A stretch of 63,899 bases of DNA, the filler included, from Octopus bimaculoides (lineage: Eukaryota): the NCBI RefSeq assembly GCF_001194135.2. It is 7 parts of 6 records of this genome, joined end to end, with 100 filler letters (N's around TTAATTAATTAA, not from the genome) between each part and the next. Parts side by side here need not be neighbours in the genome. Positions count along the whole stretch, not along the records: positions 33,319 to 48,172 come from NC_068982.1; 6 more parts are not named here. One strand, 5' to 3'. Below are positions 33,319-48,172 of the stretch, one piece after another. A program made the position numbers and the translations under genes. The notes under the pieces were generated by a model, which worked only from the letters and a program-made list of their open reading frames with translations, ran no database searches and was not told the DNA's origin. Within the stretch, counting starts at the first letter, position 1. Every line of letters starts with the position of its first letter.

Positions 33319-33650
33319 GAGTGGTTTCGGCAGACCAAGCCATTTCCTGATAAACACACTGCATCTTTGTTCTATCCTTTCTACTCTACTCAAGGCTATT
33401 TCATACATTTGCAATGGCCACATTATCCTTGGGTACAGTCCAAATTGCAGTATCCAACATTTGAATTTTCCCGGCAGTGTTGTTCTGTCAATTGCCTTCA
33501 ATCCTTGTTCTACTAACTCGTGTGTCTCTTTCCCTTGCTTCTCATCATTTAATAAATCTCTATACCATCTGCCGAGACTCTTTACTGGTAGTTCTTTCAC
33601 CGTTGGTATGTCTTCACCTCCTATCCTGAATTTCACTTCTTCTTGCATTG
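33319..33650 (-). mobile_element. RLE-clade (HERO/NeSL-like) LINE RT C-terminal fragment
   Basis: IPTVKELPVKSLGRWY..IDRTTLPGKFKCWILQFGLYPRIMWPLQMYEI..FIRKWLGLP, an open 143-aa frame cut by the linker. Confidence 0.7.
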
Positions 33651-34088
33651 GGATATTTTTGCCTTTCTGAAGAAAGCAATCAAAGTTTATAAAGTTTTCC
33701 ATTAGGAATCAAAAATACACAACAAACATTTTTGAGTGAGAAATTATGAGTTAAGTAATTATTGCTTACATTGGCTTTATGCAACATTTGTTTCTTACTG
33801 ATGGTGGGGGACTGAGTATCAAAAAGTGGGTGTACCAAATTGCCATGGTTAAATCTGTTACTGCAGAAATCAGATATAGTTGCTCAAAATTTCATTGCCC
33901 TTAACAGCAGCAGAAAGCAGATTTGCATATCACTCTATCTTTTATTGAGAGATACCATGTTTGAAAGTATTTTTCAATCATATATGTCAAGTTTATTGAA
34001 GAATGTGATTTGCTGAAATTATCAATTCTATTTTTGACATCATTACTGGGATAACCTTGAAAATGAATTTCACAATTGGTGTTAATAA

Positions 34089-34268
34089 GGCGCAGGAGTG
34101 GCTGTGTGGTAAGTAGCTTGCTTACCAACCACATGGTTCTGGGTTCAGTCCCACTGCGTGGCACCTTGAGCAAGTGTCTTCTACTATAGCTTCGGGCCAA
34201 CCAAAGCCTTGTGAGTGGATCTGGTAGACGAAAACTGAAAGAAGCCCATCGTATATATGTATATATAA

Positions 34269-34302
<34 letters not shown>

Positions 34303-34505
34303 CTGTGTTTGTCACCACCCCCTCAACATCACTTGACAACTGATGCTGGTGTGTTTACATCCCTGTAACTTAGCAGTTCAGCAAAAGAGACCAATAGAAT
34401 AAGTACTAGGCTTACAAAGAATAAGTCCTAGGGTCGATTTGCTCGACTAAAGGCGGTGCTCCAGCATGGCCGCAGTCAAATGAATGAAACAAGTAAAAGA
34501 GTAAA
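34089..34505 (+). mobile_element. SINE family A, full-length reference copy
   Basis: A box TGGCTGTGTGG (34099-34109), B box GTTCAGTCC (34143-34151), internal (TA)n(TG)n, tail ..GAAACAAGTAAAAGAGTAAAA. Confidence 0.92.
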
Positions 34506-34759
34506 AAAAAAAAAAGAAAGAGTAATTAAAAAAAAAGTTGTGTAGTACAGCCAGCCACCACTCATGAGCAAGTATGGCTTGGTAACATGCTTTCATAAAT
34601 TGTTTTAAGTGTCTTTATAGACACAAGCAGAGATAGACATCCTCTCAGCCTCTTTACATTTGAGCCTGTGGAATATTCAGGATAGAGAGGGGAATGTAGC
34701 TCTCTTGTTCAGAAAAGCAGAGGAGATGAGGCAACATGTGTAAAACTTGCACTTGAGCC

Positions 34760-35893: not shown

Positions 35894-36310
35894 GCAGGCA
35901 TGGGTGTGTAGTCGAGGAAGTCAGTTTCCATGTGGTTTTCAGATCAATCTTACAGTGTGGCATCTTAGGCGAGTATCTTCTACTATAGCTCCAAGCTAAG
36001 CAAAGCTTCGTAAGTAGATTTCGTAGACAGAAATTGAAAGAAATTGAAAGGCGGTGAGCTGGCAGAAATGTTAGCACACCGGCCAAAATGCTTAGCGGTA
36101 TTTCGTCTGCTTTTACATCCTGAGTTCAAATTCCGCCAAGGTCGACTTTGCCTTTCATCCTTTCGGGGGCGATAAATTAAGTACCAGTTACGCACTGGGG
36201 TTGATGTAATCAACTTTATCCCTTTGTCTGTCTTTCTTTGTCCCCTCTATCTTTAGCCCCTTGTGAGCAGTAAAGAAAGAAGAAATTGAAAGAAGCACAT
36301 TGTGTGTGTG
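35894..36310 (+). mobile_element. SINE family A head carrying a nested family B SINE (36051-36279)
   Basis: B copy flanked by AAGAAATTGAAAG at 36038-36050 and 36280-36292. Confidence 0.8.
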
Positions 36311-37295
36311 TGTGTGTGTGCATGCATGTGTGCGCATACGCGTGCATGTATGCATGTTTCAGTCATTAGACTGTGGTCTAAATGGGGTACCACCTTCAAG
36401 GGTTTAGTCAAACAAATCAATCCCAGGACTTATTGTCATTTAGTCTGGTATTGAAGCAACATAAAGGACACAATGTGATCCTGACTGGAAATTGAACCCA
36501 TGATCTAATAATAACAGGCCCAATAACTGGATCACATACTTTCACATATCCTATGGTAAACTGATATATTTCAAAGAGCTACTTTTCTTTGAAAAATAGC
36601 TCTAATATTTCATGACTAGAAAGCCTTAAAAGATTATAGCTCTAGTATTTCATATCTAGTAAATCTTAAGGGATTATACTGAAAAATTCCTAGCTTTAAG
36701 GGTATCACAAAAGGCTTTGCTGGTGGCCCAAACTTCCGAGTTCTTTTACAGGGCTTAGAAAAACTGAAGGACCATAAATGTGTGTGAATCTGAGAGGGAA
36801 ATTTGCTGAAAAAAAAAATCATACTTAACTGATCCTCCTGTATTTTCTTTTACCCAATACCAGGAACTTTTCAACACCCCCTTGTATAACATGTAAAGGA
36901 AACAGTAAATGAAAATATATAAATTCATTGATAGAGGCAGTGAAGAAGCTATGAAAATAAAAACTAGAACAGAAGTTTGATATGTTATATTGTCAGCAAA
37001 TACTAAATAAAGACAGCAAACTGCCGAAACTATTAATATGACAGACAAATTGTTTAGCATCATACCTTACAACTCTCTAAGTTCTGAGTTCAAATCCTGC
37101 TGAGGATGAATATTACAGGTTGTTTAGGCCCATACATATCATGTATTAAGTGGAACAGTAATTGATAAATTATTTATCTCTACTATTTTTATTCAGTTTC
37201 AGGAAATTTTTGATATGATGCAACTGATTGAACAATGATAAAATTAAATTAAAATAAAGTCTCTGAAATACTTTGATGAAACTGATAAAATAATA

Positions 37296-37703
37296 TGATA
37301 TGATGAAGTAGTTGTAAGCTGTCAACTTAATATGACAGTTCCCTGAAGGGAATAATACTACTGTTGGTTAGAACTAGGAAGCTGCACCACTTCCTGTCAG
37401 CCTTGACACATTTCCTGTGTCCTTATGTTTACAAGGGGGAGACAAGCACCTCCACCCAGCTAAGCCTGCATCCAGAGACATGTTTCTGAGACTGATGATG
37501 AGCAAAGACTCAGAAACATGTCTCTGGATGCAGGCTTAGCTGAGTGGAGGTGCTTGTCTCCCCCTTGTAAACATAAGGACACAGGAAATGTGTCAAGGCT
37601 GACATGAAGTGGTGCAGCTTCCTAGTTCTAACCAACAGTAGTATTTTTCCCTTCAGGGGACTGTCACATTAAGTTGACAGCATACAACTACTTCGTCGTA
37701 TCA
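37296..37703. mobile_element. Fold-back element, ~195-bp arms and 18-nt spacer, hammerhead at the axis
   Basis: 37296-37490 is the reverse complement of 37509-37703 with few mismatches. Confidence 0.92.
37489..37525 (+). ncRNA. Minimal type-I hammerhead ribozyme motif
   Basis: AGA-CTGATGA-TGAG-CAAAGA-CTCA-GAAA-CATG-TC-TCT; 4-bp helix II, palindromic helix III ACATGT, GUC triplet, 3-bp helix I. Confidence 0.7.
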
Positions 37704-39124
37704 CTACTGCATAAATCTCTCTGAGAGATTTAGAAATGTATTATTTCTAAACATGATATATGTTTTTAATATTTCAAATTATTAAGACAGCAAGCTGGGA
37801 GAATCATTAGCACTCTGGGTAAACGTTTCATGCCATTTTCATCCATCCTTACATGCCATTTTCATCCATCCTTACATGCCACTGAGGTTGACTTTGCCTT
37901 TTATCCTTTTAGAATTGATAAAATAAGTACCAGTTGAAAACTGGGGATCAATATAAATGGCTTACCCATCCCACAAAATATTTGGCCTTGTGCCAAAATT
38001 TGAAGCCAATGTTTCAAATTATTCACTGCCTTACTCAAATGTACCCCATGAACAAAAAATAGTTGATTCTTTTCAATGTCAATAAAATTAACACTGATCA
38101 CATTCACACACACACACACAGAGTTAAACTGTAATTCTTTGATCAACAATTGCAGCATGGAACACACATATTAGCCATTTAAAAACACAAAAACTGTTAA
38201 CTTCACTTAAACATTTATTATTTGGTCTTAAAATTTTCATTGCACCAACTGCGACCTGGTCACTGACACAGTTCTAATGATTTATTCAAACCTGCTCTAC
38301 TAAAACTGACTTCAAGTATATAAACAATGATTGTTTATGGGGTGAAATTTAGATTTAACGCTTACGAACATGAAAACTAAATAAGGCAAACCCATTTTCG
38401 TTAAAAAAATATTCCCAAGATAATTTCTTTATAAGAAAATAAGCTGTTTTCTGATATTTAATATTATACCATATCATAAAAGTTGACTTAACCACCTTCA
38501 GAAGTTGGATACTATGAATGGCAGGCCAAGAAAAAAAAAATGAATAAAAGCACGGCGGTAAGGTTGGGGATAACATTAGCAGACGTTTTAAAGTTTTAGG
38601 AGTGCAGATTCCATTTATTGATTTATGTTAAAGATTCCATGTTTCACCAAATATCAGAAATGTTTAGAGCTATAGACTCAAGGGAGATATTTCAGCCGTC
38701 AAAGCATGACTTGAAAATAAAAAGTACAAACAAAACAGTTACTTCCTAAGCATGTTCATTTGCTTGAAGCAAAATTTTTGAAAAGCAGATATTAACAAGA
38801 CAAAGTTAGCTATTTAATCAAGAATGGTGATATTTTAAATTTCTTCAAAAGATTAAATTTATACTACGACCAAATATTTTTGTAGTCATTTGATTGCTTA
38901 TTTATTTATTTATTTATTTATTCATTCATTCATTCTATGTATCTATAATGCTTTATCGTTCAAGTTTAGCATGCTAATCTATAACCTGCTTCTTGTCCAC
39001 ATTTGTGTATGCTGCAATCATATTCAAAGAGAAATGTTCTATAACCTTTTCCAGTGGGAGCAAATTTTCTTTTACATAACAAACTATAAAGATAATAGGC
39101 TTTCTCTCCAACCAGCCAAAACTG

Positions 39125-39453
39125 GCTCATGCACTCTGTTGGTTATAATAGCCAATGTTCCAATTGATTTGATCAATGGAACAGCCTGCTTGTGAAATTA
39201 ACATGCAAGTGGCTGAGTACAACACAGATACATGTACTCTTAATGCAATTCTTAGGGAGATTCAGTGTGACACACTAAATATGGCAAGGCTAGCCCATTG
39301 AACTGCAGGTAAAACTCAATTTTGCCATCTGAGTGGAGTGGAGCAACATGAAACAAAGTGTCTCACTCAAGGATGCAATACACTGCACAGAATTGAACTG
39401 AGACCTTATGATCATGAGACAAATACACTAACCACTAAGCCATGTGCTTTCAC
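39125..39453 (-). mobile_element. SINE family E, diverged
   Basis: Collinear with 18008-18334. Confidence 0.7.
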
Positions 39454-39515: not shown

Positions 39516-39559
<44 letters not shown>

Positions 39560-40060
39560 CTTCCTCCTCAACATCATCAGCGTTTAACATCCGTTTTCCA
39601 TGCTGGCATGGTTTGGACGGTTCGACTGGGGGTCTGGGAAGTCAGGAGGCTGCACCAGGCTCCAATCTAATCTGGCAGTGTTTTCTACAGCTTGATGCCC
39701 TTTCTAATGCCAACCACTCTGAGAGTGTAGTGGGTGCTTTTAACGTGCCACCGGCACAGGGGTCAGAGGGGGCTGGCATCAACTACGTTTGGATGGTGCT
39801 TTTACGTGCCACCACCACGAGAGCCAGAGGGGGCTGGCATTGACCACGTTTGGATGGTGCTTTTATATGCCACCGGCACAGGAGTCAGTCAAGGCTGCAC
39901 TGGCATTGGCCACGTTCGGATGGTGCTTTTCACATGCCACCAGCACAGGGTCCAGTCGGGGTGCAGGGGCTGGCATCAACCGTGTTTGGATGGTGCTTTT
40001 TACATGTCACCGGCACGGGGAGCCAGACAGGTGGTGCTGGCATTAGCCACATGTTGCAAT
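39560..40060 (-). mobile_element. Family C (RTE 3' UTR) with a ~60-69-bp tandem array
   Basis: Four to five units of CTGGCATY..CACGTTTGGATGGTGCTTTT..TGCCACCGGCAC at ~39771-40050. Confidence 0.85.
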
Positions 40061-40129
40061 TTGCTGTATTTGAGAAGACACACCAAACCAAGTAAAATCT
40101 CTACCATCCGTGCATGCAAGCTTGTCCTT

Positions 40130-40400
40130 CACAGGTGCTGGTGCCCCATAAAATCCACTTGTACCAGTGCTGTGTAAATGCACCCATGCCAATGGCATGT
40201 AAAAAGCACCTGACACACTCCGTAAAGTGGTTGGCATTAGGAAGGGCATCTAGCCATAGAAACCATGCCATAGCAGACAACTGGAGTCTGGACAGCTCCC
40301 CAGCTGGCCAGCTCCTGTCAAATTATCCAACCCATGCCAGCCCAATTATCCAACCCATTTTCCATGGAAAATGGATGTTAAACAATGATGCTGATGATGT
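40130..40400 (+). mobile_element. Family C (RTE 3' UTR), head-to-head with the previous copy
   Basis: AAAAGCACC..GTGGTTGGCATTAGGAAGGGCATC..ATGTTAAAC-(GAT)n. Confidence 0.8.
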
Positions 40401-40826
40401 ATGTATATACGTATGCATACATGTATACATGTATGCAAATATTGCTCTCCCCTTCTGTAATCCAAAAAGTTGTGGAAACAGTTAAAAAAACAATCCTTAA
40501 TGTTTGCCATGAAGTTACTTTCTCTCCTTAATGACATTGTTTCATATTGATTCTATGATATCTATTCTTTTGTCATATACTACGAGTCTTTTGTGAAGGT
40601 ATGTAACTCAGTATTTAGGCGTGTTGGGCTCACAATTATTAGGTCTCTGGTTTGATTCTCAAACTAGGTAACACATGTCCTTGAGCAAGGCACTTCATTC
40701 CACATTGCTCCAGTACAGCTAAAAATGAGTATCAATGATACATTAGGCTTTACAGTGCAATAGATTTGTGTACCATTGAGTGGGGGGTCTTTTTATTCTC
40801 TGCCTATATGACTTGAAAATCCAGTT

Positions 40827-41221
40827 GTTGGCATTTTTTTTTGGCATTCCGTCGCTTACGATGTCGAGGGTTCCAGTTGAACCGATCAACGGAACAGCCT
40901 GCTCGTGAAATTAACGTGCAAGTGGCTGAGCACTCCACAGACACGTGTACCCTTAACGTAGTTCTCGGGGATATTCAGCGTGACACAGTGTGACAAGGCT
41001 GACCCTTTGAATTACAGGCATAACAGAAACAGGAAGCAAGAGTGAGAGAAAGTTGTGGTGAAAGAGTACAGCAGGGTTCACCACAATCCCCTGCCAGAGC
41101 TTCGTGGAGCTTTAGGTGTTTTCGCTCAATAAACACTCACAATGCCCGGTCTGGGAATCGAAACCGCGATCCTATGACCGCGAGTCCGCTGCCCTAACCA
41201 CTGGGCCATTGCGCCTCCACA
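40827..41221 (-). mobile_element. SINE family D with 12-bp TSD
   Basis: Highly similar to 13794-14178; TSD GAAAATCCAGTT at 40815-40826 and 41222-41233. Confidence 0.92.
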
Positions 41222-41294
41222 GAAAATCCAGTTAAGTTCCAGCCTATAAGCTCAAGGCAGATGCTGTTAGTCTCTTATGCTTGAAAATTTGTAT

Positions 41295-41477
41295 ATAAGG
41301 AAGCATCCAGTATTCACTGTAAAGTGGTTGGCATTAGGAAGCTGTTTGTAGAAACCATGCCAAAGAGGACACCAGAGTTTAACACAACCCTGCAGCTTGC
41401 TGGATCCTGTCAAAACATTCAACCTGTGCCAGCATGTAAAGCAGACATTAAATGATGATGATGATGATGATGATGAA
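41295..41477 (+). mobile_element. Family C fragment
   Basis: C tail followed by (GAT)n. Confidence 0.75.
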
Positions 41478-41934
41478 ATTGTTGGTTCTCCAGAGGCCAA
41501 CGATGTATGAGAAAAGTGTGAGTGTCATAGAATTTATATAAGACAGTGTTATTAAGGGTGAGAAAATAACTTCAGATTGGCAAACTAGGAGATTTTTGTT
41601 TTTTAATCAGTAAATACTTCAAACTGAGAATCTTTTAAAAGGCATCAATATAATTGAATCTCCTACTATGAAAGCAACCTGTCTGTCAGGTCACAGTTAA
41701 TGGTGTTGGGGACACTGTCAAGTTCTCACATACTGAACTCAAATGCACCTAAGGCTTCTGTTATCTTTTCCAAAATTGACTTCTCTGCTTTAATGACTTC
41801 CTCCCTTGCCCTTGTAACCACACATACTTCGATAACAATGATTTTAATGAAATAATTTTGCTTCGGTTGACAGCTCAAGAATCCTGAAAGTACATGTTAC
41901 GAGAAAGCAAACCCACAACAGCTATACTAGAATT

Positions 41935-44118
41935 TCATCATGATCATCATGATCATGATCATCATCATCATTTAACATCCGCTTTCCATGCTGGCATGGG
42001 TTGGACGGTTTGACTGGGCTGGCACGTTGGAAGGCTGCACAAGACTCCAGTCTGGTTTGGCATGATTTTCTATGGCTGGATGCCCTTCCTAACACCAACC
42101 ACTCCAAGAGTGTAATGGGTGCTTTTATATGCCACTGGCACAGGTGCCATTTGCATGACACCAGGGTGCTTTTACATGCCATCAGCATGAGTGATAATTT
42201 GTGTGACACCAGTATCTCCCATGACTGCGATTTTGCTCAGTTTGATGGGTCTTCTCAAGCACAACATAATGCCAAAAGTCTTAGTCATTGCCTCTGTGAG
42301 ACCCAACACTCGAAAGGAACTCAGCCACTTTGCTCCATGAGGCCCACCGCTCAAAAGTTTTCATTACATGCCACCAGTACGGGTGCACTTGGCTTGATAA
42401 GTCCTCTCAAGCACAGCACATCACCAAAGGTCTTGGTCACTAATCATTGCCTCTGTGAGGCCCAAAGTTTGAAGATCATGCTTCACCATCTCCTCCCATG
42501 TCTACCTCTACCACAGGTTCCTCCCACAGTTCAGCACTTCTTTACACAGCTGTCCTCATCCATATGCATCACATGACCATACCAGCACAGTCGTCTCTCT
42601 TGCACACCACATCTGATATCTCTTATGCCTAACTTTTCTCTCAACATACTTACACTCAGTCGAACATGCACACTGACATTGTACATCCAACAAAGCATAC
42701 CGGCTTCATTTCTTTCATACCCACACATATTCTCAGCTGTCACAACCCATGTTTCACTGCCAGTCTGCATAGCTGTTTGCACACAGGCATCAAACAATCT
42801 ATCTTTCACTCTGAGAGAAATGCCTTTTGTTGCTAGCAGAGGTAGGAGCTCTGAACTTTGCCCAGCCTAATCTTATTCACACAGTTATGTTCTCGGAGCA
42901 TCCACCTCTACGACTAACTTGGTTACCTAGATAATTGAAACTAACTACTACCTCTAGCTTGCCCCACTGGCAGTTGATGGAGTCTATTTTCTGCACATTT
43001 TCAGCATTTATTGTACCTGTGCATCTTTCACATACAAAAGCTAGTTTCCCTGTTAACCTTCCTCTAATATTGCTACACCTTTTATCTGTCCAAAGCTTAC
43101 ACCGGGTGCATCTTATGGAGTTTCTACCTACATCTTTTCTACAGATTGAGCAGGGCCATCTACCTGAAGGGATTAGAGATTTGTCTGCCTTCCTACTTTC
43201 TAAGACTTTAGTTTTTGCTAGGTTAACTCTAAGGCTCTTTGATTCTAGACCTTGCTTCCATACTTGGAAATTCTCTAGTTCAGGTAGTGATTCAACTATA
43301 AGAGTAAGGTCATTAGCATAGAGGAGCTCCCAGGGGCAGCCTCTCTTGAATTCCTCTGTTATTGCCTGGAGGACAAGAGAGGGCTGAGTACTAATCGTTG
43401 GTGAACCCCTACTTGTACCCTGAATTCTTCCCTGTACTCATTGCCAACCCTCACCTTACTGACAACATCCCTGTACATAGCTTGTACAGCTTTCACCAAC
43501 CACTTGTCTATCCTTAGTTTCTGCATCGACCACCAGATAAGGGATCAGGGGACCCTGTCAAAGGCTTTCTCCAAGTCAACAAAGACCAAGTACAGAGGTT
43601 TATCTTTGGTTAGGAATTACTCCTGCAGCTGCCTTACCAGAAATATAGCATCAGTGGTGCTTCTCCCAGGCACAAAACTAAACTGCATCTCATCTAGACT
43701 AACTCTCTTCCTAATTAGTTGGGCTATGACTCTTACTGTAACTTTCATTACCTTATCCAGCAATTTGATACTTCTGTAATTATTTCTATCTAAGGCATCA
43801 CTTTTACCTTTGAAGCAGCTGACTATGGCACTGCTACATCAGTCATTGGCATGACTCTTTCATGAACCACCTGATTTACAATACAGGCGATTGGACTATA
43901 ACCTACACTGCCAGATATTTTAAGCATCTCAGTGGTGATACCTGATGAGCTGGGGGGGGTTTTCTCTCACACACTGTCTTGCAATCCAAAACACTTCACT
44001 TATTTGGTCCTCACATCGCTGACCATAGGCAAACTTCTTTTCTGCTTCTCCCTTCGTTAGATATACTTGTCTCTTAGTATCCCTTCTGGCAATTTTATAC
44101 AGTTTCCTGCTACTTCCA
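41935..44118 (-). mobile_element. RTE-clade LINE, 5'-truncated; its 3' UTR equals family C
   Basis: PLELLYANDLTL (RT YADD region), KDRLFDACVQTAM..GSETW..ERRLCWYGHVMHMDEDSCVKKC; continues into the C tail and (GAT)n. Confidence 0.9.
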
Positions 44119-44142
44119 ATTTATTTATAATTAATGATTTCT

Positions 44143-44297
44143 TAAAAAGCACCCAGTACACTTTGTAAAGTGGTTGGCATTAGGAAGAGCATCCAGCTGT
44201 AGAAACCAAACCTAAACAGACTATGGAACTTGGTGTGGCTCCTTGCCTTTCCTGCTACTGTCAAATGTTCCACCCATGCCAGCATGGAAACTGGATG

Positions 44298-44332
<35 letters not shown>
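44143..44332 (+). mobile_element. Family C fragment
   Basis: C tail followed by (GAT)n. Confidence 0.8.
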
Positions 44333-45139
44333 CATAGGCATGAGACTTCAAATTTGGAAGGTAAAAGGCAAAGTTGATCTGGGAAGGATTTGAACTAAGA
44401 ACAAAACAGCAAAAAGACAACAAAAAAAAAATCAAAAATACAGCAAGGCATTTTTGACAAATGCTCTAACCATTCTGCCTACTCAAACTGTCTCTCAAAT
44501 CTAAAAGGTGAAGCTGACCTCAGCGGGATTTGAGCTCAGAACAAAAAGAGCTGAAAAAAAAAAATCACAAGACATTTTTGTTCAATGTTCCAACAATTCT
44601 GCCTGCCCATTGCCTGTATAAATACCCAAGCTATCTTTCCAACCATAAAAACAGAGCTTCTATGTGGTTGTCTGATTTGTTAGAAATAACAGCCAAACCT
44701 CCCTCATATAACACCACACTATCTTAGAAACAGTGAGAGATCCTTTCAACACTGTTGTTGTAGAGATATAACAAAAAGATAGGTTCATAGGTCTGCTTTA
44801 TCAGGGTTGACCTGTGACTAAATAGTAACAACAACAAGAACAAATTGTTTCACATCCTGCATAAATCTGCCAATCTCTGCTCTCTGATAACCTTTCTTGG
44901 CAACCCTGCATTCTTCACATTCTCTAAAATTTGTTTTTCTTGTCACAGTCCCTTGAAATACTCCAGCTGTTAATTCTAATATACAGCACTTCAATACATC
45001 CTACTCCAACCTGTAGTAACTACAAATTTATTTGAGATAGTGCGTGTAACATATATACTCAAAATTATTTGTAAAACAACAGATATTTTTATGGTAGGCA
45101 AAATTTGAACTCAGAATGTAGCGATGGGCAAAATACTGC

Positions 45140-45204: not shown

Positions 45205-45600
45205 ATCCATCTTTACATTCTGAGTTCAAATTTTGCTGAGGTTGACTTAACCTTTCATCCTTTCAGGGTCAATAAATTAAGTACCAGTGAAAACACTGGG
45301 GTCGATGTAATTGACTACTCCCCTTCCCCACAAATTTCAGCCTTGTGCCTTTAGTAGAAAGGATTATTATTATCATTAAGATGGCGAGCTGGCAGAAGTA
45401 TTAACACACTGGACAAAATGCTTAGCAATATTTTGCCCATTACTACATTCTGAATTCAAGTTCCGCCAAGGTCACTTTGTCTTTCATCCTTTTGGGGTCG
45501 ATAAATTAAGTACCAGTGAAACACTGGGTCAATGTAATTGACTAGTCTCCTCCCCACATATCTGAGGCCTTGTGCTTCCTGTAGAAAGGATTATTATTAT
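45205..45600 (+). mobile_element. Two tandem family B SINEs with (ATT)n-type tails
   Basis: ~45205-45375 (5'-truncated) and ~45379-45600; both end ..GTAGAAAGGATTATTATT. Confidence 0.8.
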
Positions 45601-45825
45601 TATTACTATAAAAATGTAGTGGATTGATAGTATCGTTACAATGGTGGAAAAATTGCCCTATGGTATTATTTGTCCTGCCTATTTACATTGAGTCCAAATT
45701 CCACAGGGGTCAACTTGACCTTTCATTCCTCTGCTGTAAATAAAATAAAATAAAGTAGTGGGTGGGATCAATGTAATCAACTCTTTTGAAAATTTCTAAC
45801 CTTCATTATTACTGAATATATACTC

Positions 45826-46037
45826 TTTTATTCTTTTACTCTTTTACTTGTTTCAGTCATTTGACTGTGGCCATGCTGGAGCACCGCCTTTAGTCGAGCA
45901 AATCGACTCTAGGACTTATTTTTTGGAAGCCTAGTACTTATTCTATCGGTCTCTTTTGCCGAACCGCTAAGTTACAGGGACATAAACACATCAGCATCGG
46001 TTGTCAAGCAATGCTAGGGGGGACAAACACAGACACA

Positions 46038-46104
<67 letters not shown>

Positions 46105-46205
46105 GACGGGCTTCTTTCAGTTTCCGTCTACCAAATCCACTCACAAGGCTTTGTTTGGTCAGCCCAAGGCTATAGTAGAAGACACTCGCCCAAGGTGCCA
46201 TGCAG
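45826..46205 (-). mobile_element. SINE family A, 5'-truncated
   Basis: Reverse-complement match to 34160-34505. Confidence 0.85.
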
Positions 46206-47814
46206 TAATTTCTCTTTTACTGTATCATTACATGTCATACCATTTTCTCTTCTCCTACTAGTACAAAGCTCTCTATTTTTTTTTCTGGAGAAGGAGAGGA
46301 ACAGAGGCAATTATTTATTTGTTGTCCAAATAGAGGTTGAAAGTTCAAACCCTGTTAAACTCTCACCCTAAGCTTTAACACTGAGCAATAAAGTATCTCT
46401 TGCACTTTTATGAAAGGAACAAAATGCAAACTATTCTAGCAACTGGAAAGTGGCAGGAAGTGATAGAGCAGGATGAATTGACATAATGCAAATGATGCAA
46501 TAAAATATATTATATGAATCATAGGAAAAGGTTACATCTCATTTTGGATCAGCAATTAAAAGTACAAAGATGTTTATCATCATCATCAACACAATCATCA
46601 TCATCACTATCCTCATTAATTGTTTAGCTTCTCTGCTGGCATGGGTTGGGCAGTTTGACAGAGTCTGGTGAGTGGAAGGACTGCATCATGTCTCAATCGC
46701 TACTTTGGCATGGTTTCTTACGACTGGATGCCCTTCCAAACACCAACCTTTCTACAGAGTGTATTAGGTGCTTTTTCTTCATGGCAACAATACTGATGAC
46801 GATCACTTTTGAAACTTGCAAGACTGAAGGTCTAAAGTGGCCCCTATAACTGAGGGAGGACAGAAGAGAAAGTGAACTATGATCCTAGGAAGGAGAGCAA
46901 TTAAGAGATGCAGAGGGGGAAGTATAGTAGAAAATAGGGGAGAAGGAAAGGGTTTGCAATATGGTTAAGGAAAATGGAGGGTAGAGTCAAAAGACCCTAT
47001 GTGCCAGTACCTCAACTTTACAATTTCTAATTTTCAGTTCTAATATAAACTGCTGGAGCTAAAGATACCCTGGTTGCCAACACCCAACTTACTCTCCAGA
47101 TGCTACATGTTAACAGATTTATAATGTAACCATTCTAATTGTGGAGCCTCAACAGAGCCCTGCATCATTATTTTCATCACTACCTTCCTGTGCCGGGAGT
47201 CAGTAATTTGTCTAGAGCTATCCATCATTATAAGGAGTAAGTATGGACAGGTGTGAGGGAAAAAAGATAGGAAGGGAGCCAGAGACTAGGGTGGAAAGGG
47301 ATTCTGAGAGAATCATTGAAAGGAAGAGAGGTAGAGAAATGTGGTGAGGGGCCGTGAAAGGTTATAATTATTCTACCACACAGAACTGGCTGTGTAGTAG
47401 AATAACTCAACAGTACAGAAGAAATGCCACCAATGTCAATGAATTTCTCCAGAGAAAAAAAATTACCGATATAGTTCCTCAATAGTTTTCTTTTCTTCTT
47501 TTAACAAAAGTTATATAACTATGGGAACTGTCTAAATACACACCAATATTCAATTATTTAATTAGTGTAATGAGCCAAAATATAAATGCCATGTTTGAAA
47601 AAAATGACACACTGTTAAGCCTACAGCCAAATTTTTTGACATGACTCATTGCTGGTTTGTAACAATTATGATTTCAGTCTTCTATGTATTGTAAACTTAT
47701 TCAGTTACACTCATTTTAGGATAGACACTGCTTAGTATGATAGCAAATATTAGAACAGGATGAAACAAACACTACTTGTAAAATTCTACTCTGTTTCCTT
47801 TGTTTATGTTGTAG

Positions 47815-48172
47815 GAGAGAAATGTGTTCGCATGGATGATGGTACGCTTGCACTAAATGAGGATGCAAAGAAAGAGGTCTGGAGATGCCACTACGATAGA
47901 TTGCTTAATAAAGACAATGAATGGGAGAAAGAGAGCCTGCCGTATGTCGACCCAATAGAGGGACCAGCTATCCGAGTTGATAGTACCAGGGTAGATAAAG
48001 CAATTAAGAGTATGAAGACAAGGGAAAGCCCCTGGCCCATCAGGAATCACTGCAGAGATGCTCAAAATATCTGGCAGTGTTGGCTACAGCCTAGTCACCC
48101 GTATTACGAACCAGGTGATACACGAAGGAGTCATACCCAATGACTGGTGTAGCAGCATCATAGTCAACTGCT
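47815..48172 (+). mobile_element. RTE-clade LINE fragment (region upstream of the RT core)
   Basis: GEKCVRMDDGTLALNEDAKKEVWRCHYDRLLN..; PGPSGITAEMLKISG..IPNDWCSSIIVNC; same family as 41935-44118. Confidence 0.85.

What the first reader, a model, noticed from the sequence alone, without database searches (positions are those of the whole stretch)
37296..37703. ~400-bp fold-back element with a minimal hammerhead ribozyme on its symmetry axis
Seen: ~195-bp inverted arms around an 18-nt spacer. The spacer plus the start of the right arm read CTGATGA-TGAG-caaaga-CTCA-GAAA-CATG-TC, i.e. the full hammerhead core, a 4-bp helix II, a self-complementary helix III (ACATGT) and a GUC site (predicted cut after 37522). 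Established: minimal type-I hammerheads with palindromic helix III that cleave as dimers occur in Penelope-like element pseudo-LTRs and in retrozymes, and Penelope-like elements often have inverted pseudo-LTRs. Inference: this is a non-autonomous, snap-back-derived ribozyme retroelement. The left arm runs into the ribozyme itself, so a full-length transcript would sequester GAAACAUGUC. This could act as a conformational off-switch that only truncated or dimeric RNAs escape.
Basis: partly seen in the sequence, partly recalled or inferred. Interest (0 to 1): 0.9.

Follow-up and report, generated by a model that had tools for sequence, protein, structure and literature searches.

The report
Fold-back repeat with a hammerhead-like relic
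A 408-bp DNA hairpin in repeat-rich invertebrate-type DNA carries the conserved letters of a hammerhead ribozyme at its centre; it is most likely a dead, truncated twin insertion of a Penelope-like retroelement, a known kind of genomic junk, not a working ribozyme switch.

Summary
Arms 37296-37493 and 37506-37703 are 198 nt long and 95% complementary. The centre reads CTGATGA-TGAG-caaaga-CTCA-GAAA-CATG-TC, which puts the predicted cut after 37522.

The motif is very unlikely to be chance. It had 0 hits in 3000 shuffles of the piece and 0 in 75 Mb of simulated sequence.

It is still a poor ribozyme here:
- No Rfam hammerhead model matches, even at E<=10 on 57 nt.
- The 10.1-11.1 pair is U-A.
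- Helix I has only 3 contiguous pairs.
- The hammerhead fold is 9 kcal/mol worse than a rod fold in a 49-nt RNA.
- The full RNA forms a hairpin of -369 kcal/mol.

No second copy, tandem partner, target-site duplication (TSD) or reverse-transcriptase/GIY-YIG reading frame was found, and the host genome could not be reached.

The anatomy fits published behaviour of Penelope-like elements (PLEs). It is a 45% GC insert in 21-22% GC DNA, both arms end at the same position about 200 nt past the motif, and the copies lie head-to-head. Published PLE behaviour includes nicking and extending both DNA strands at AT-rich sites, a common internal reverse-transcription start about 110 nt past the hammerhead, and frequent inverted 5'-truncated copies.

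Best reading (0.55): twin truncated PLE-type insertion with a relic hammerhead. The proposed off-switch is unsupported. Ordinary; a new member of a known kind.

The parts
37296..37493 (-). Left arm: reverse-complement copy of the right arm. In the model it is a 5'-truncated copy on the minus strand, with its 3' end at 37296.
   Evidence: 198 nt, 9 mismatches to the right arm; CpG->TpG at 37301 and 37304
37491..37508 (+). Unique central 18 nt, A-CTGATGA-TGAG-CAAAGA (the tool's strict spacer is 37494-37505). It belongs to the longer plus-strand copy. The inner junction has 2-nt microhomology (CT/AG).
37506..37703 (+). Right arm: plus-strand copy running from the hammerhead-like motif to the outer end, 206 nt after A9 (the A of the A9-U-G triplet).
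37492..37522 (+). Hammerhead-like core. C3-A9 is CUGAUGA (37492-98). Helix II is UGAG/CUCA (37499-502 / 37509-12) with loop CAAAGA. G12-A15.1 is GAAA (37513-16). Helix III is the self-complementary ACAUGU (37516-21). C17 is 37522, so the predicted cut is 37522/37523.
   Evidence: motif present, not chance; no Rfam hammerhead match
37485..37491 (+). Apparent helix I 5' strand, supplied by the end of the left arm. AGA (37489-91) pairs with UCU (37523-25); after a bulged G37488, UCU (37485-87) pairs with GGA (37526-28). This is weak and probably fortuitous, because the authentic 5' strand would have been lost at the truncation.
   Evidence: pairs listed; hammerhead-like fold -3.5 vs MFE -12.6 kcal/mol
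37523..37528 (+). Helix I 3' strand (UCUGGA), immediately after the predicted cut. In the full RNA it is paired with 37471-37476 of the left arm instead.
37661..37693 (+). 6-bp stem-loop CUGUCA-N8-UGACAG followed by the A/C-rich CAUACAACUAC, 10-40 nt from the outer end of the arm. It may be a counterpart of the A/C-rich stem-loop where a Poseidon PLE starts reverse transcription (inference only).
   Evidence: PMC11167929
37181..37295 (.). AT-rich left flank (20.9% GC), lying between a degenerate SINE (37010-37111 match) and the fold-back. No target-site duplication.
37704..37780 (.). AT-rich right flank (22.1% GC); a SINE copy starts at about 37784.

Best explanation
The element is a dead insertion made of two very short, 5'-truncated copies of the 3'-terminal ~200 nt of a hammerhead-bearing retroelement of the Penelope-like kind (a PLE or a non-autonomous derivative). 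The copies lie head-to-head with their 3' ends outward.

Inferred mechanism: a PLE ribonucleoprotein nicked both strands of an AT-rich site. Each DNA 3' end primed reverse transcription at the same internal start site of the element RNA. That start site forms the two outer ends, 37296 and 37703. Both cDNAs aborted within the hammerhead region, at about -6 and +12 relative to A9, and were joined through 2 nt of microhomology.

The plus-strand copy therefore keeps the hammerhead from C3 onward but has lost the 5' strand of helix I. The minus-strand copy keeps only the GAAA/helix III/cut-site half. The hammerhead is a relic with no realistic activity at this locus. Any transcript across the element would be a 198-bp hairpin.

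Shown directly: the fold-back, the motif and its improbability by chance, the composition jump, the absence of a TSD, and the poor hammerhead fold. Inferred: PLE ancestry and the two-strand priming mechanism. The arms have diverged 4.5% (JC 0.047), so the event is old.
For: - Motif is not chance: 0 of 3000 shuffles and 0 in 75 Mb for the medium and strict descriptors; one hit in the real piece.
- Hammerhead-bearing PLE fragments number in the thousands in many invertebrate genomes (PMC4209133, PMC7229834). Octopus genomes carry PLE families (PMC13282606).
- The whole fold-back is a 45% GC island with sharp edges in 21-22% GC flanks on both sides. This looks like an insertion rather than a local duplication.
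- Both arms end at the same element position, 181 nt past the cut site.
- In the Poseidon PLE of Anolis, the protein nicks and extends both strands at AT-rich DNA. The reverse-transcription start is the same on both strands and lies 111-118 nt into the ORF. The ORF start codon sits at the start of stem II, with the cut 26 nt downstream. 5' truncations are tolerated (PMC11167929).
- Here A9-U-G is 37498-37500 and the cut lies at +25.
- PLE insertions 'often' carry an adjacent inverted 5'-truncated copy (PMC8557442). Dual min-hammerheads 100-700 bp apart on opposite strands were seen in Schistosoma (PMC4209133).
- Helix III is a short palindrome, as in PLE and metazoan type-I hammerheads.
Against: - No other copy of the arm could be found, so family membership and conservation of the core are untested.
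- No RT/GIY-YIG ORF lies in the 14.8-kb piece; there are only degraded LINE-type fragments.
- The arm is not coding: stops in all frames and no protein homologues. In Poseidon, by contrast, the ORF starts in the hammerhead.
- Helix II is 4 bp with U10.1-A11.1, not the 6-8 bp with G10.1-C11.1 plus an unpaired nucleotide reported for metazoan PLE min-hammerheads.
- No Rfam hammerhead hit at E<=10.
- The centre is also C(TGA)3G, in a genome where (TGA)n is the 3' tail of an abundant SINE. That allows the opposite polarity.
- The distance from the motif to the element end (206 nt) is about twice that in Poseidon.
Confidence: 0.55

Rival explanations
1. This is a generic fold-back with no ribozyme ancestry. 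The arms are two copies of an unrelated ~195-nt repeat lying tail-to-tail, for example a SINE-like retroposon whose 3' end carries a short (TGA)n tail. CTGATGATGAG is then simply that microsatellite tail, and the hammerhead reading is an accidental chimera of tail, spacer and the reverse complement of the other copy's 3' end.
For: (TGA)n/(ATG)n arrays end six copies of an abundant ~200-nt SINE in this same piece. The centre reads TGA-GAC-TGA-TGA-TGA-G. CTGATGA occurs 5 times in the piece against 1.8 expected. The last ~50 nt of the left arm align loosely with that SINE's 3' end (TCCACCCA...ATGTTT...TGATGATGA). Helix I is only 3 bp, the 10.1-11.1 pair is U-A, and no Rfam hammerhead model matches.
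Against: The loose alignment is not significant: score 13.5 against a null of 9.8 +/- 1.4 with a maximum of 15. An HMM of the SINE family does not hit the fold-back at E<=10 with filters off. Even if a (TGA)n tail is granted, the arm end must still read GACATGTTTC plus the flanking C and G to give GAAA, a palindromic helix III, U16.1 and C17. I estimate this at about 1e-6 per palindrome. No other (TGA)n tail in the piece yields a hammerhead-like hit. The tail would be only 3 units long, against 8-12 in the SINE copies. No TSDs flank either putative copy.
Confidence: 0.22
2. This is a miniature inverted-repeat or Foldback-type DNA transposon, or a local inverted duplication formed by replication template switching. 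The hammerhead-like motif is incidental.
For: The arms are long and near-perfect around a short spacer, with no coding capacity. The inner junction has 2-nt microhomology, which is typical of template switching. Octopus genomes are reported to hold MITE and TIR families.
Against: No TSD of 6 bp or more at or near the ends; only 4-5 nt AT-rich matches at offset positions. No recognisable terminal motif. GC jumps from 21-22% to 45% at both outer boundaries, which a duplication of local sequence would not produce on both sides. The motif is improbable by chance.
Confidence: 0.13
3. This is a functional RNA locus. Either the ribozyme is gated by the hairpin, with truncated or dimeric RNAs cleaving at 37522/37523, or the locus is a hairpin-RNA gene that yields small RNAs.
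For: The core nucleotides are intact. Helix III is palindromic, as in dimer-dependent hammerheads. The hairpin is extremely stable. Generic miRNA-precursor models align to it.
Against: All miRNA hits are far below their gathering scores and appear on both strands, as they would for any long hairpin. The hammerhead fold is 9 kcal/mol worse than a rod even in a 49-nt RNA, and RNAs starting at C3 do not form helix II in their minimum-energy fold. There is no second hammerhead in the piece for dimer formation. The arms have drifted 4.5%, including CpG decay, with no sign of constraint. PLE min-hammerheads cleave poorly in vitro (low activity even as dimers, or none without the element's protein).
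Confidence: 0.05

Closest known systems
Minimal type-I hammerheads in pseudo-LTRs of Penelope-like elements, and the inverted 5'-truncated twin copies typical of PLE insertions (Cervera & de la Pena 2014, PMC4209133; Craig et al. 2021, PMC8557442; Frangieh et al. 2024, PMC11167929)
   Same: Complete CUGAUGA/GAAA/GUC core. Short palindromic helix III, implying dimer dependence. An A9-U-G triplet at the start of stem II with the cut about 25 nt downstream. The motif lies within about 200 nt of the element's 3' end. Head-to-head inverted copies ending at a common position. AT-rich target and no clear TSD.
   Different: No RT/GIY-YIG ORF nearby. The arm is non-coding. Helix II is 4 bp with U10.1-A11.1 instead of 6-8 bp with G10.1-C11.1 and an unpaired nucleotide. 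Helix I is only 3 contiguous pairs. Only one of the two copies keeps the CUGAUGA box. No family of copies has been demonstrated.
Metazoan non-LTR retrozymes: tandem 170-400-bp repeats with type-I hammerheads, expressed as circular RNAs (PMC7229834). A 2026 preprint (10.64898/2026.07.22.740005) proposes that they are PLE derivatives.
   Same: A small non-coding unit of about 200 nt. A type-I hammerhead with a 4-bp helix II and a 2-bp helix III capped by a 2-nt palindromic loop.
   Different: No direct tandem arrangement. No intact helix I. The arm alone is not unusually structured (z -0.39). The arrangement is inverted rather than head-to-tail.
Type-I hammerheads of newt/salamander satellite DNA and of the SINE-like elements in Schistosoma repeats (the newt/amphibian ones self-cleave as dimers)
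   Same: A weak helix III that requires two copies to build the active fold.
   Different: Those hammerheads match the Rfam Hammerhead_1 type consensus and occur in tandem arrays. This one does neither.
Foldback/MITE DNA transposons and hairpin-RNA loci
   Same: Long near-perfect inverted arms with a short loop and no ORF.
   Different: No TSD or terminal motif. miRNA-model scores are far below threshold. No evidence of copies or expression.

Membership tests
Hammerhead ribozyme, type I | Conserved core C3-U-G-A-N-G-A9, G12-A-A14, A15.1-U16.1 and H17 | tested here: met
   CUGAUGA 37492-98, GAAA 37513-16, U 37521, C 37522
Hammerhead ribozyme, type I | Helix II hairpin between A9 and G12, closed by the conserved G10.1-C11.1 pair | tested here: not met
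   A 4-bp helix UGAG/CUCA is present, but the 10.1-11.1 pair is U-A. Reading U37499 as the extra nucleotide gives G-C, but then A37512 is left between 11.1 and G12.
Hammerhead ribozyme, type I | Helix I of about 4-6 bp joining the sequence 5' of C3 to the sequence 3' of H17 | tested here: not met
   Only 3 contiguous pairs (AGA/UCU), then a bulged G and 3 more pairs. The hammerhead-like fold is -3.5 kcal/mol against an MFE of -12.6 kcal/mol for 37484-37532.
Hammerhead ribozyme, type I | Helix III hairpin, or a self-complementary stretch that builds helix III in a dimer | tested here: met
   ACAUGU 37516-21 is a perfect 6-nt palindrome. However, no second hammerhead lies within the 14.8-kb piece.
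Hammerhead ribozyme (Rfam hammerhead covariance models) | Covariance-model score at or above the gathering threshold | tested here: not met
   No hammerhead family is listed at E<=10 on 14.8 kb, 131 nt or 57 nt.
Hammerhead ribozyme | Site-specific self-cleavage | not testable with these tools
   Needs in vitro transcription of monomer, dimer and truncated RNAs.
Penelope-like element (pseudo-LTR / 3'-terminal fragment) | Association with an ORF encoding a telomerase-like RT and a GIY-YIG endonuclease | tested here: not met
   Only weak RVT_1 (43620-43838, minus strand) and LINE-type fragments in the piece; no GIY-YIG. A solo truncated fragment would not be expected to carry the ORF.
Penelope-like element (pseudo-LTR / 3'-terminal fragment) | Adjacent inverted 5'-truncated copy forming inverted repeats; both DNA strands primed from one internal reverse-transcription start; AT-rich target | tested here: met
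   Head-to-head arms of equal length. Flanks are 21-22% GC against 45% for the insert. Literature. This is consistency of anatomy, not proof of ancestry.
Penelope-like element min-hammerhead (Cervera & de la Pena 2014) | Long helix II (6-8 bp), an unpaired nucleotide after A9, helix I of 4-5 bp, palindromic 15.2-16.2 | tested here: inconclusive
   The palindrome is met and a U follows A9. Helix II is 4 bp (or 3 bp plus a U-A pair) and helix I is 3 bp.
Penelope-like element min-hammerhead | A consensus family of many genomic copies with covariation | not testable with these tools
Arm and SINE patterns are absent from JGI metagenomes and IMG/VR, arm 22-mer gave only a chance hit in GTDB genomes, and arm pseudo-ORFs are absent from the 5.8-billion protein set.
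Non-LTR retrozyme | Head-to-tail tandem repeats of 170-400 bp, each with a type-I hammerhead | tested here: not met
   No direct repeat of the arm and no tandem array here.
MITE / Foldback DNA transposon | Terminal inverted repeats flanked by a target-site duplication | tested here: not met
   The best flank matches are 4-5 nt, AT-rich and at offset positions.
microRNA precursor families (Rfam) | Score at or above the gathering threshold | tested here: not met
   The best hit is mir-3199, 59 bits against a gathering score of 100. Hits fall on both strands and come from many unrelated families.

The most novel reading that the evidence does not exclude
The breakpoints of both truncated copies fall inside the hammerhead (at about -6 and +12 from A9). 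This could be because the folded or protein-bound hammerhead region is a preferred stop or template-switch point for the PLE reverse transcriptase. Such twin insertions would then systematically create hairpins centred on a half-ribozyme. Transcripts of these hairpins would be double-stranded RNA matching the element's reverse-transcription-initiation and hammerhead region, giving a built-in source of silencing small RNAs against the parent family.
Probability: 0.06. Interest if true: 0.5.

Novelty: new member of a known kind. Interest (0 to 1): 0.25.

Why it matters
If the PLE reading is right, this locus is a compact natural record of a PLE insertion primed from both DNA strands. That behaviour was reconstituted in vitro only in 2024. 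The breakpoints map to the hammerhead, so a genome-wide census of such hairpins could show where PLE reverse transcription starts and aborts in vivo. As a single decayed locus, it has no evident function. It does not show a new ribozyme class or a regulatory switch.

Tried and rejected
- **Rfam search for a hammerhead.** Tried at three scales (14.8 kb, 131 nt, 57 nt; E<=10). None was found, only sub-threshold miRNA and C/D-box hits.
- **Search for other copies of the arm.** All attempts were negative:
  - within the piece;
  - a 22-mer in JGI metagenomes, 0 hits;
  - the same 22-mer in GTDB genomes, one hit inside a Clostridium coding region with no extended similarity, so a chance match;
  - a hammerhead-specific pattern in IMG/VR, 0 hits;
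  - arm translations in all frames against 5.8 billion proteins, none;
  - exact look-up of window ORFs, not on record.
- **Reaching the host genome through its abundant SINE.** 0 hits in IMG/VR and JGI metagenomes.
- **Reaching the host genome through LINE homologues.** ENA contigs were fetched, but they share only the LINE at 67-78% nucleotide identity. They carry no matching SINE and no arm, so they come from other organisms.
- **One SINE split by a 770-bp insertion with a 10-bp TSD.** Rejected: 37010-37111 and 37784-37949 are two separate SINE copies.
- **Arm as a diverged member of the (TGA)n-tailed SINE family.** Rejected: the pairwise score lies within the null range and the family HMM finds no hit.
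- **Six-frame Pfam scan of the whole piece.** The tool refuses translations that contain stops, so I scanned stop-free segments instead.
- **Lunse, Weinberg & Breaker paper (PMC5785218) and the supplements of the two key PLE papers.** Not held.
- **tRNA search.** None found.

Full report
**What is there**

The repeat finder reports inverted arms 37296-37493 and 37506-37703, 198 nt each, 95% complementary, with 12 nt between them. There are 9 mismatches. Two of them are CpG->TpG changes in the left arm. The Jukes-Cantor distance between the arms is 0.047. As RNA the 441-nt region folds into a single hairpin of -369 kcal/mol, z = -44 against shuffles.

The centre reads A-CTGATGA-TGAG-CAAAGA-CTCA-GAAA-CATG-TC. 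In hammerhead numbering:
- C3-A9 is 37492-37498.
- Helix II is 37499-37502 paired with 37509-37512.
- G12-A15.1 is 37513-37516.
- Helix III is the self-complementary ACAUGU at 37516-37521.
- C17 is 37522, so the predicted cut is 37522/37523.

**Is the motif chance?**

I wrote a descriptor and ran it on the piece and on null sequences. The real piece has exactly one hit on both strands, this one.

| Descriptor | Requirements | 3000 dinucleotide shuffles of the piece | 75 Mb first-order Markov sequence |
|---|---|---|---|
| Strict | CTGATGA; helix II >=4 Watson-Crick pairs; palindrome >=4 nt; helix I >=3 bp | 0 | 0 |
| Medium | CTGANGA; G-U pairs allowed; optional bulge | 0 | 0 |
| Relaxed | CTGANGA; helix II >=3 bp; G-U pairs allowed; optional bulge; no helix I requirement | 0.02 per piece | 0.59 per Mb |

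The piece is enriched about 3-fold for CTGATGA because (TGA)n microsatellites are common in it. That does not change the conclusion. A chance origin is below about 1e-3 per piece under any reasonable descriptor.

Hammerhead-bearing PLE and retrozyme fragments, by contrast, number in the thousands in many invertebrate genomes (PMC4209133, PMC7229834). So descent from a real hammerhead is far more likely than accident.

**Is it a working hammerhead, or a member of a curated family?**

No.
- No Rfam hammerhead model reports it at E<=10, whether 14.8 kb, 131 nt or 57 nt are searched. Only sub-threshold miRNA-hairpin and C/D-box models respond, on both strands. This is what any long hairpin and any UGAUGA would produce.
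- The pair closing helix II is U10.1-A11.1. Cervera & de la Pena list a highly conserved G10.1-C11.1, an unpaired nucleotide after A9, a helix II of 6-8 bp and a helix I of 4-5 bp as the features of metazoan PLE min-hammerheads.
- Helix I here is AGA/UCU, then a bulged G, then three more pairs. Its 5' strand is simply the end of the left arm.
- For the 49-nt RNA 37484-37532, the hammerhead-like fold is -3.5 kcal/mol against -12.6 kcal/mol for a rod that pairs GAGAC with GUCUC across C3 and the cut site. RNAs that start at C3 do not form helix II in their minimum-energy structure.
- There is no second hammerhead in the piece for dimer formation.

**Surroundings**

The piece is repeat-rich, invertebrate-type eukaryotic DNA. 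Dinucleotide frequencies show CpG depletion.
- Copies of a SINE with a tRNA-like B-box flank the element, at 37010-37111 and 37784-37949.
- Six copies of a second, (TGA)n-tailed SINE lie downstream.
- Degraded LINE fragments lie at 33319-33708, 42534-44120 and 47754-48140.
- No GIY-YIG or PLE-type ORF is present.

The fold-back itself is 44.9% GC. It sits in flanks of 20.9% and 22.1% GC, with sharp boundaries on both sides. No target-site duplication is detectable. The arm has stops in all frames and no protein homologues. It shows no unusual structure on its own (z -0.39). It has no detectable homology to either SINE family.

**Related copies**

None could be found. The host genome is not in any collection I could reach.

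**Best explanation**

The anatomy matches what is published for Penelope-like elements.
- Craig et al. describe insertions as highly 5'-truncated, often with an inverted 5'-truncated copy adjacent, which forms inverted repeats. Hammerheads lie in the pseudo-LTR near the 3' end.
- Frangieh et al. showed several things for a Poseidon element. The protein nicks and extends both strands of AT-rich DNA. Reverse transcription starts at the same internal site for both strands, in an A/C-rich stem-loop 111-118 nt into the ORF. The ORF start codon sits at the start of hammerhead stem II, with the cut 26 nt downstream. Hammerhead cleavage is not needed for insertion.
- Here an A9-U-G triplet occupies 37498-37500 and the cut lies at +25.
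- Both arms end at the same position (+206), shortly after a stem-loop and an A/C-rich stretch (37661-37693).
- The target is AT-rich.
- The two copies meet head-to-head at -6 and +12, with 2 nt of microhomology.

I therefore read the locus as two abortive cDNAs of the 3'-terminal ~200 nt of a PLE-type element, one primed from each strand and then joined. The longer copy retains the hammerhead from C3 onward but has lost the helix I 5' strand. The shorter copy retains only the 3' half. This also explains the weak helix I and the absence of cleavage-defined ends: the breakpoints lie 31 and 14 nt upstream of the cut site. Confidence is 0.55.

**Rivals**

1. *Tail-to-tail pair of a (TGA)n-tailed retroposon (0.22).* The centre is also C(TGA)3G in a genome where (TGA)n is a common SINE tail, so the polarity could be the opposite and the hammerhead an accidental chimera. 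Against this: the similarity to the SINE 3' end is not significant, the tail would be unusually short, and the arm end would still have to spell GACATGTTTC by accident.
2. *MITE/Foldback element or local template-switch duplication (0.13).* This is disfavoured by the lack of a TSD and by the composition jump on both sides.
3. *Functional switch or hairpin-RNA gene (0.05).* This has no support beyond the shape of the hairpin.

**Verdict**

The locus is a probable new member of a known kind, of modest interest.

Noticed in passing
window 39546-39839 (-), 40124-40415 (+), 41198-41480 (+), 41935-42214 (-), 44040-44338 (+), 46580-46870 (-): Six copies of a ~200-290-nt SINE-like repeat (core AAAAAGCACCC..GTGGTTGGCATTAGGAAGGGCATCCAGC..CCATGCCAGCATGGAAA..GGATGTTAAA) ending in a (TGA)n tail. 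Two pairs lie in inverted orientation: tail-to-tail at 41198-41480 / 41935-42214, and head-to-head at 39546-39839 / 40124-40415.
   Followed up: partly
window 39733-40020: Tandem array of 61-66-nt units (GGTGCTTTTACGTGCCACC...GGCTGGCATC...), 3-5 copies. It is derived from the 5' part of the (TGA)n-tailed SINE and sits between the head-to-head pair.
   Followed up: partly
window 36040-36239, 37010-37111, 37784-37949, 45210-45325, 45378-45546, 45617-45784 (+); 44359-44617 (-): Copies of a second SINE with a tRNA-like B-box (GAGTTCAAATTCC) and the 3' motif GATAAATTAAGTACCAGT. Two of them bracket the fold-back. The copy at 37784-37949 carries a perfect 23-nt tandem duplication at 37829-37881.
   Followed up: partly
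window 47047-47244 (-): Fragment resembling eukaryotic small-subunit rRNA: 46.7 bits (gathering score 50), E 4.4e-10, model positions 28-600 with a large internal deletion. It is probably an rRNA pseudogene fragment or an rRNA-derived repeat.
   Followed up: no
window 34197-34514 and 45826-46158: Inverted repeats of about 320 nt, 90-92% complementary and 11.3 kb apart, each containing a (TA)n(TG)n microsatellite. They are two copies of another repeat in opposite orientation, bracketing most of the piece.
   Followed up: no
window 33319-33708 (-), 42534-44120 (-), 47754-48140 (+): Degraded fragments of non-LTR retrotransposons. The first is 50-70% identical to proteins that sit beside RVT_1 ORFs in ENA assemblies of other invertebrate-associated samples. 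There is weak RVT_1 at 43620-43838 and a weak PHD/C1-like zinc finger at 42880-43437.
   Followed up: partly
window 39379-39447 (-): Sub-threshold tRNA-model match (24.5 bits, gathering score 29). ARAGORN does not call it. It is probably a tRNA-derived repeat head.
   Followed up: no
L001 5404-5425 (Clostridium sp. AM58-1XD, NZ_QSDR01000030.1): Exact 22-nt match to AAACATGTCTCTGGATGCAGGC in what reads as a bacterial coding region, with no similarity beyond it. This is a chance hit and a reminder that 22-mers are not unique across 596 Gb.
   Followed up: yes
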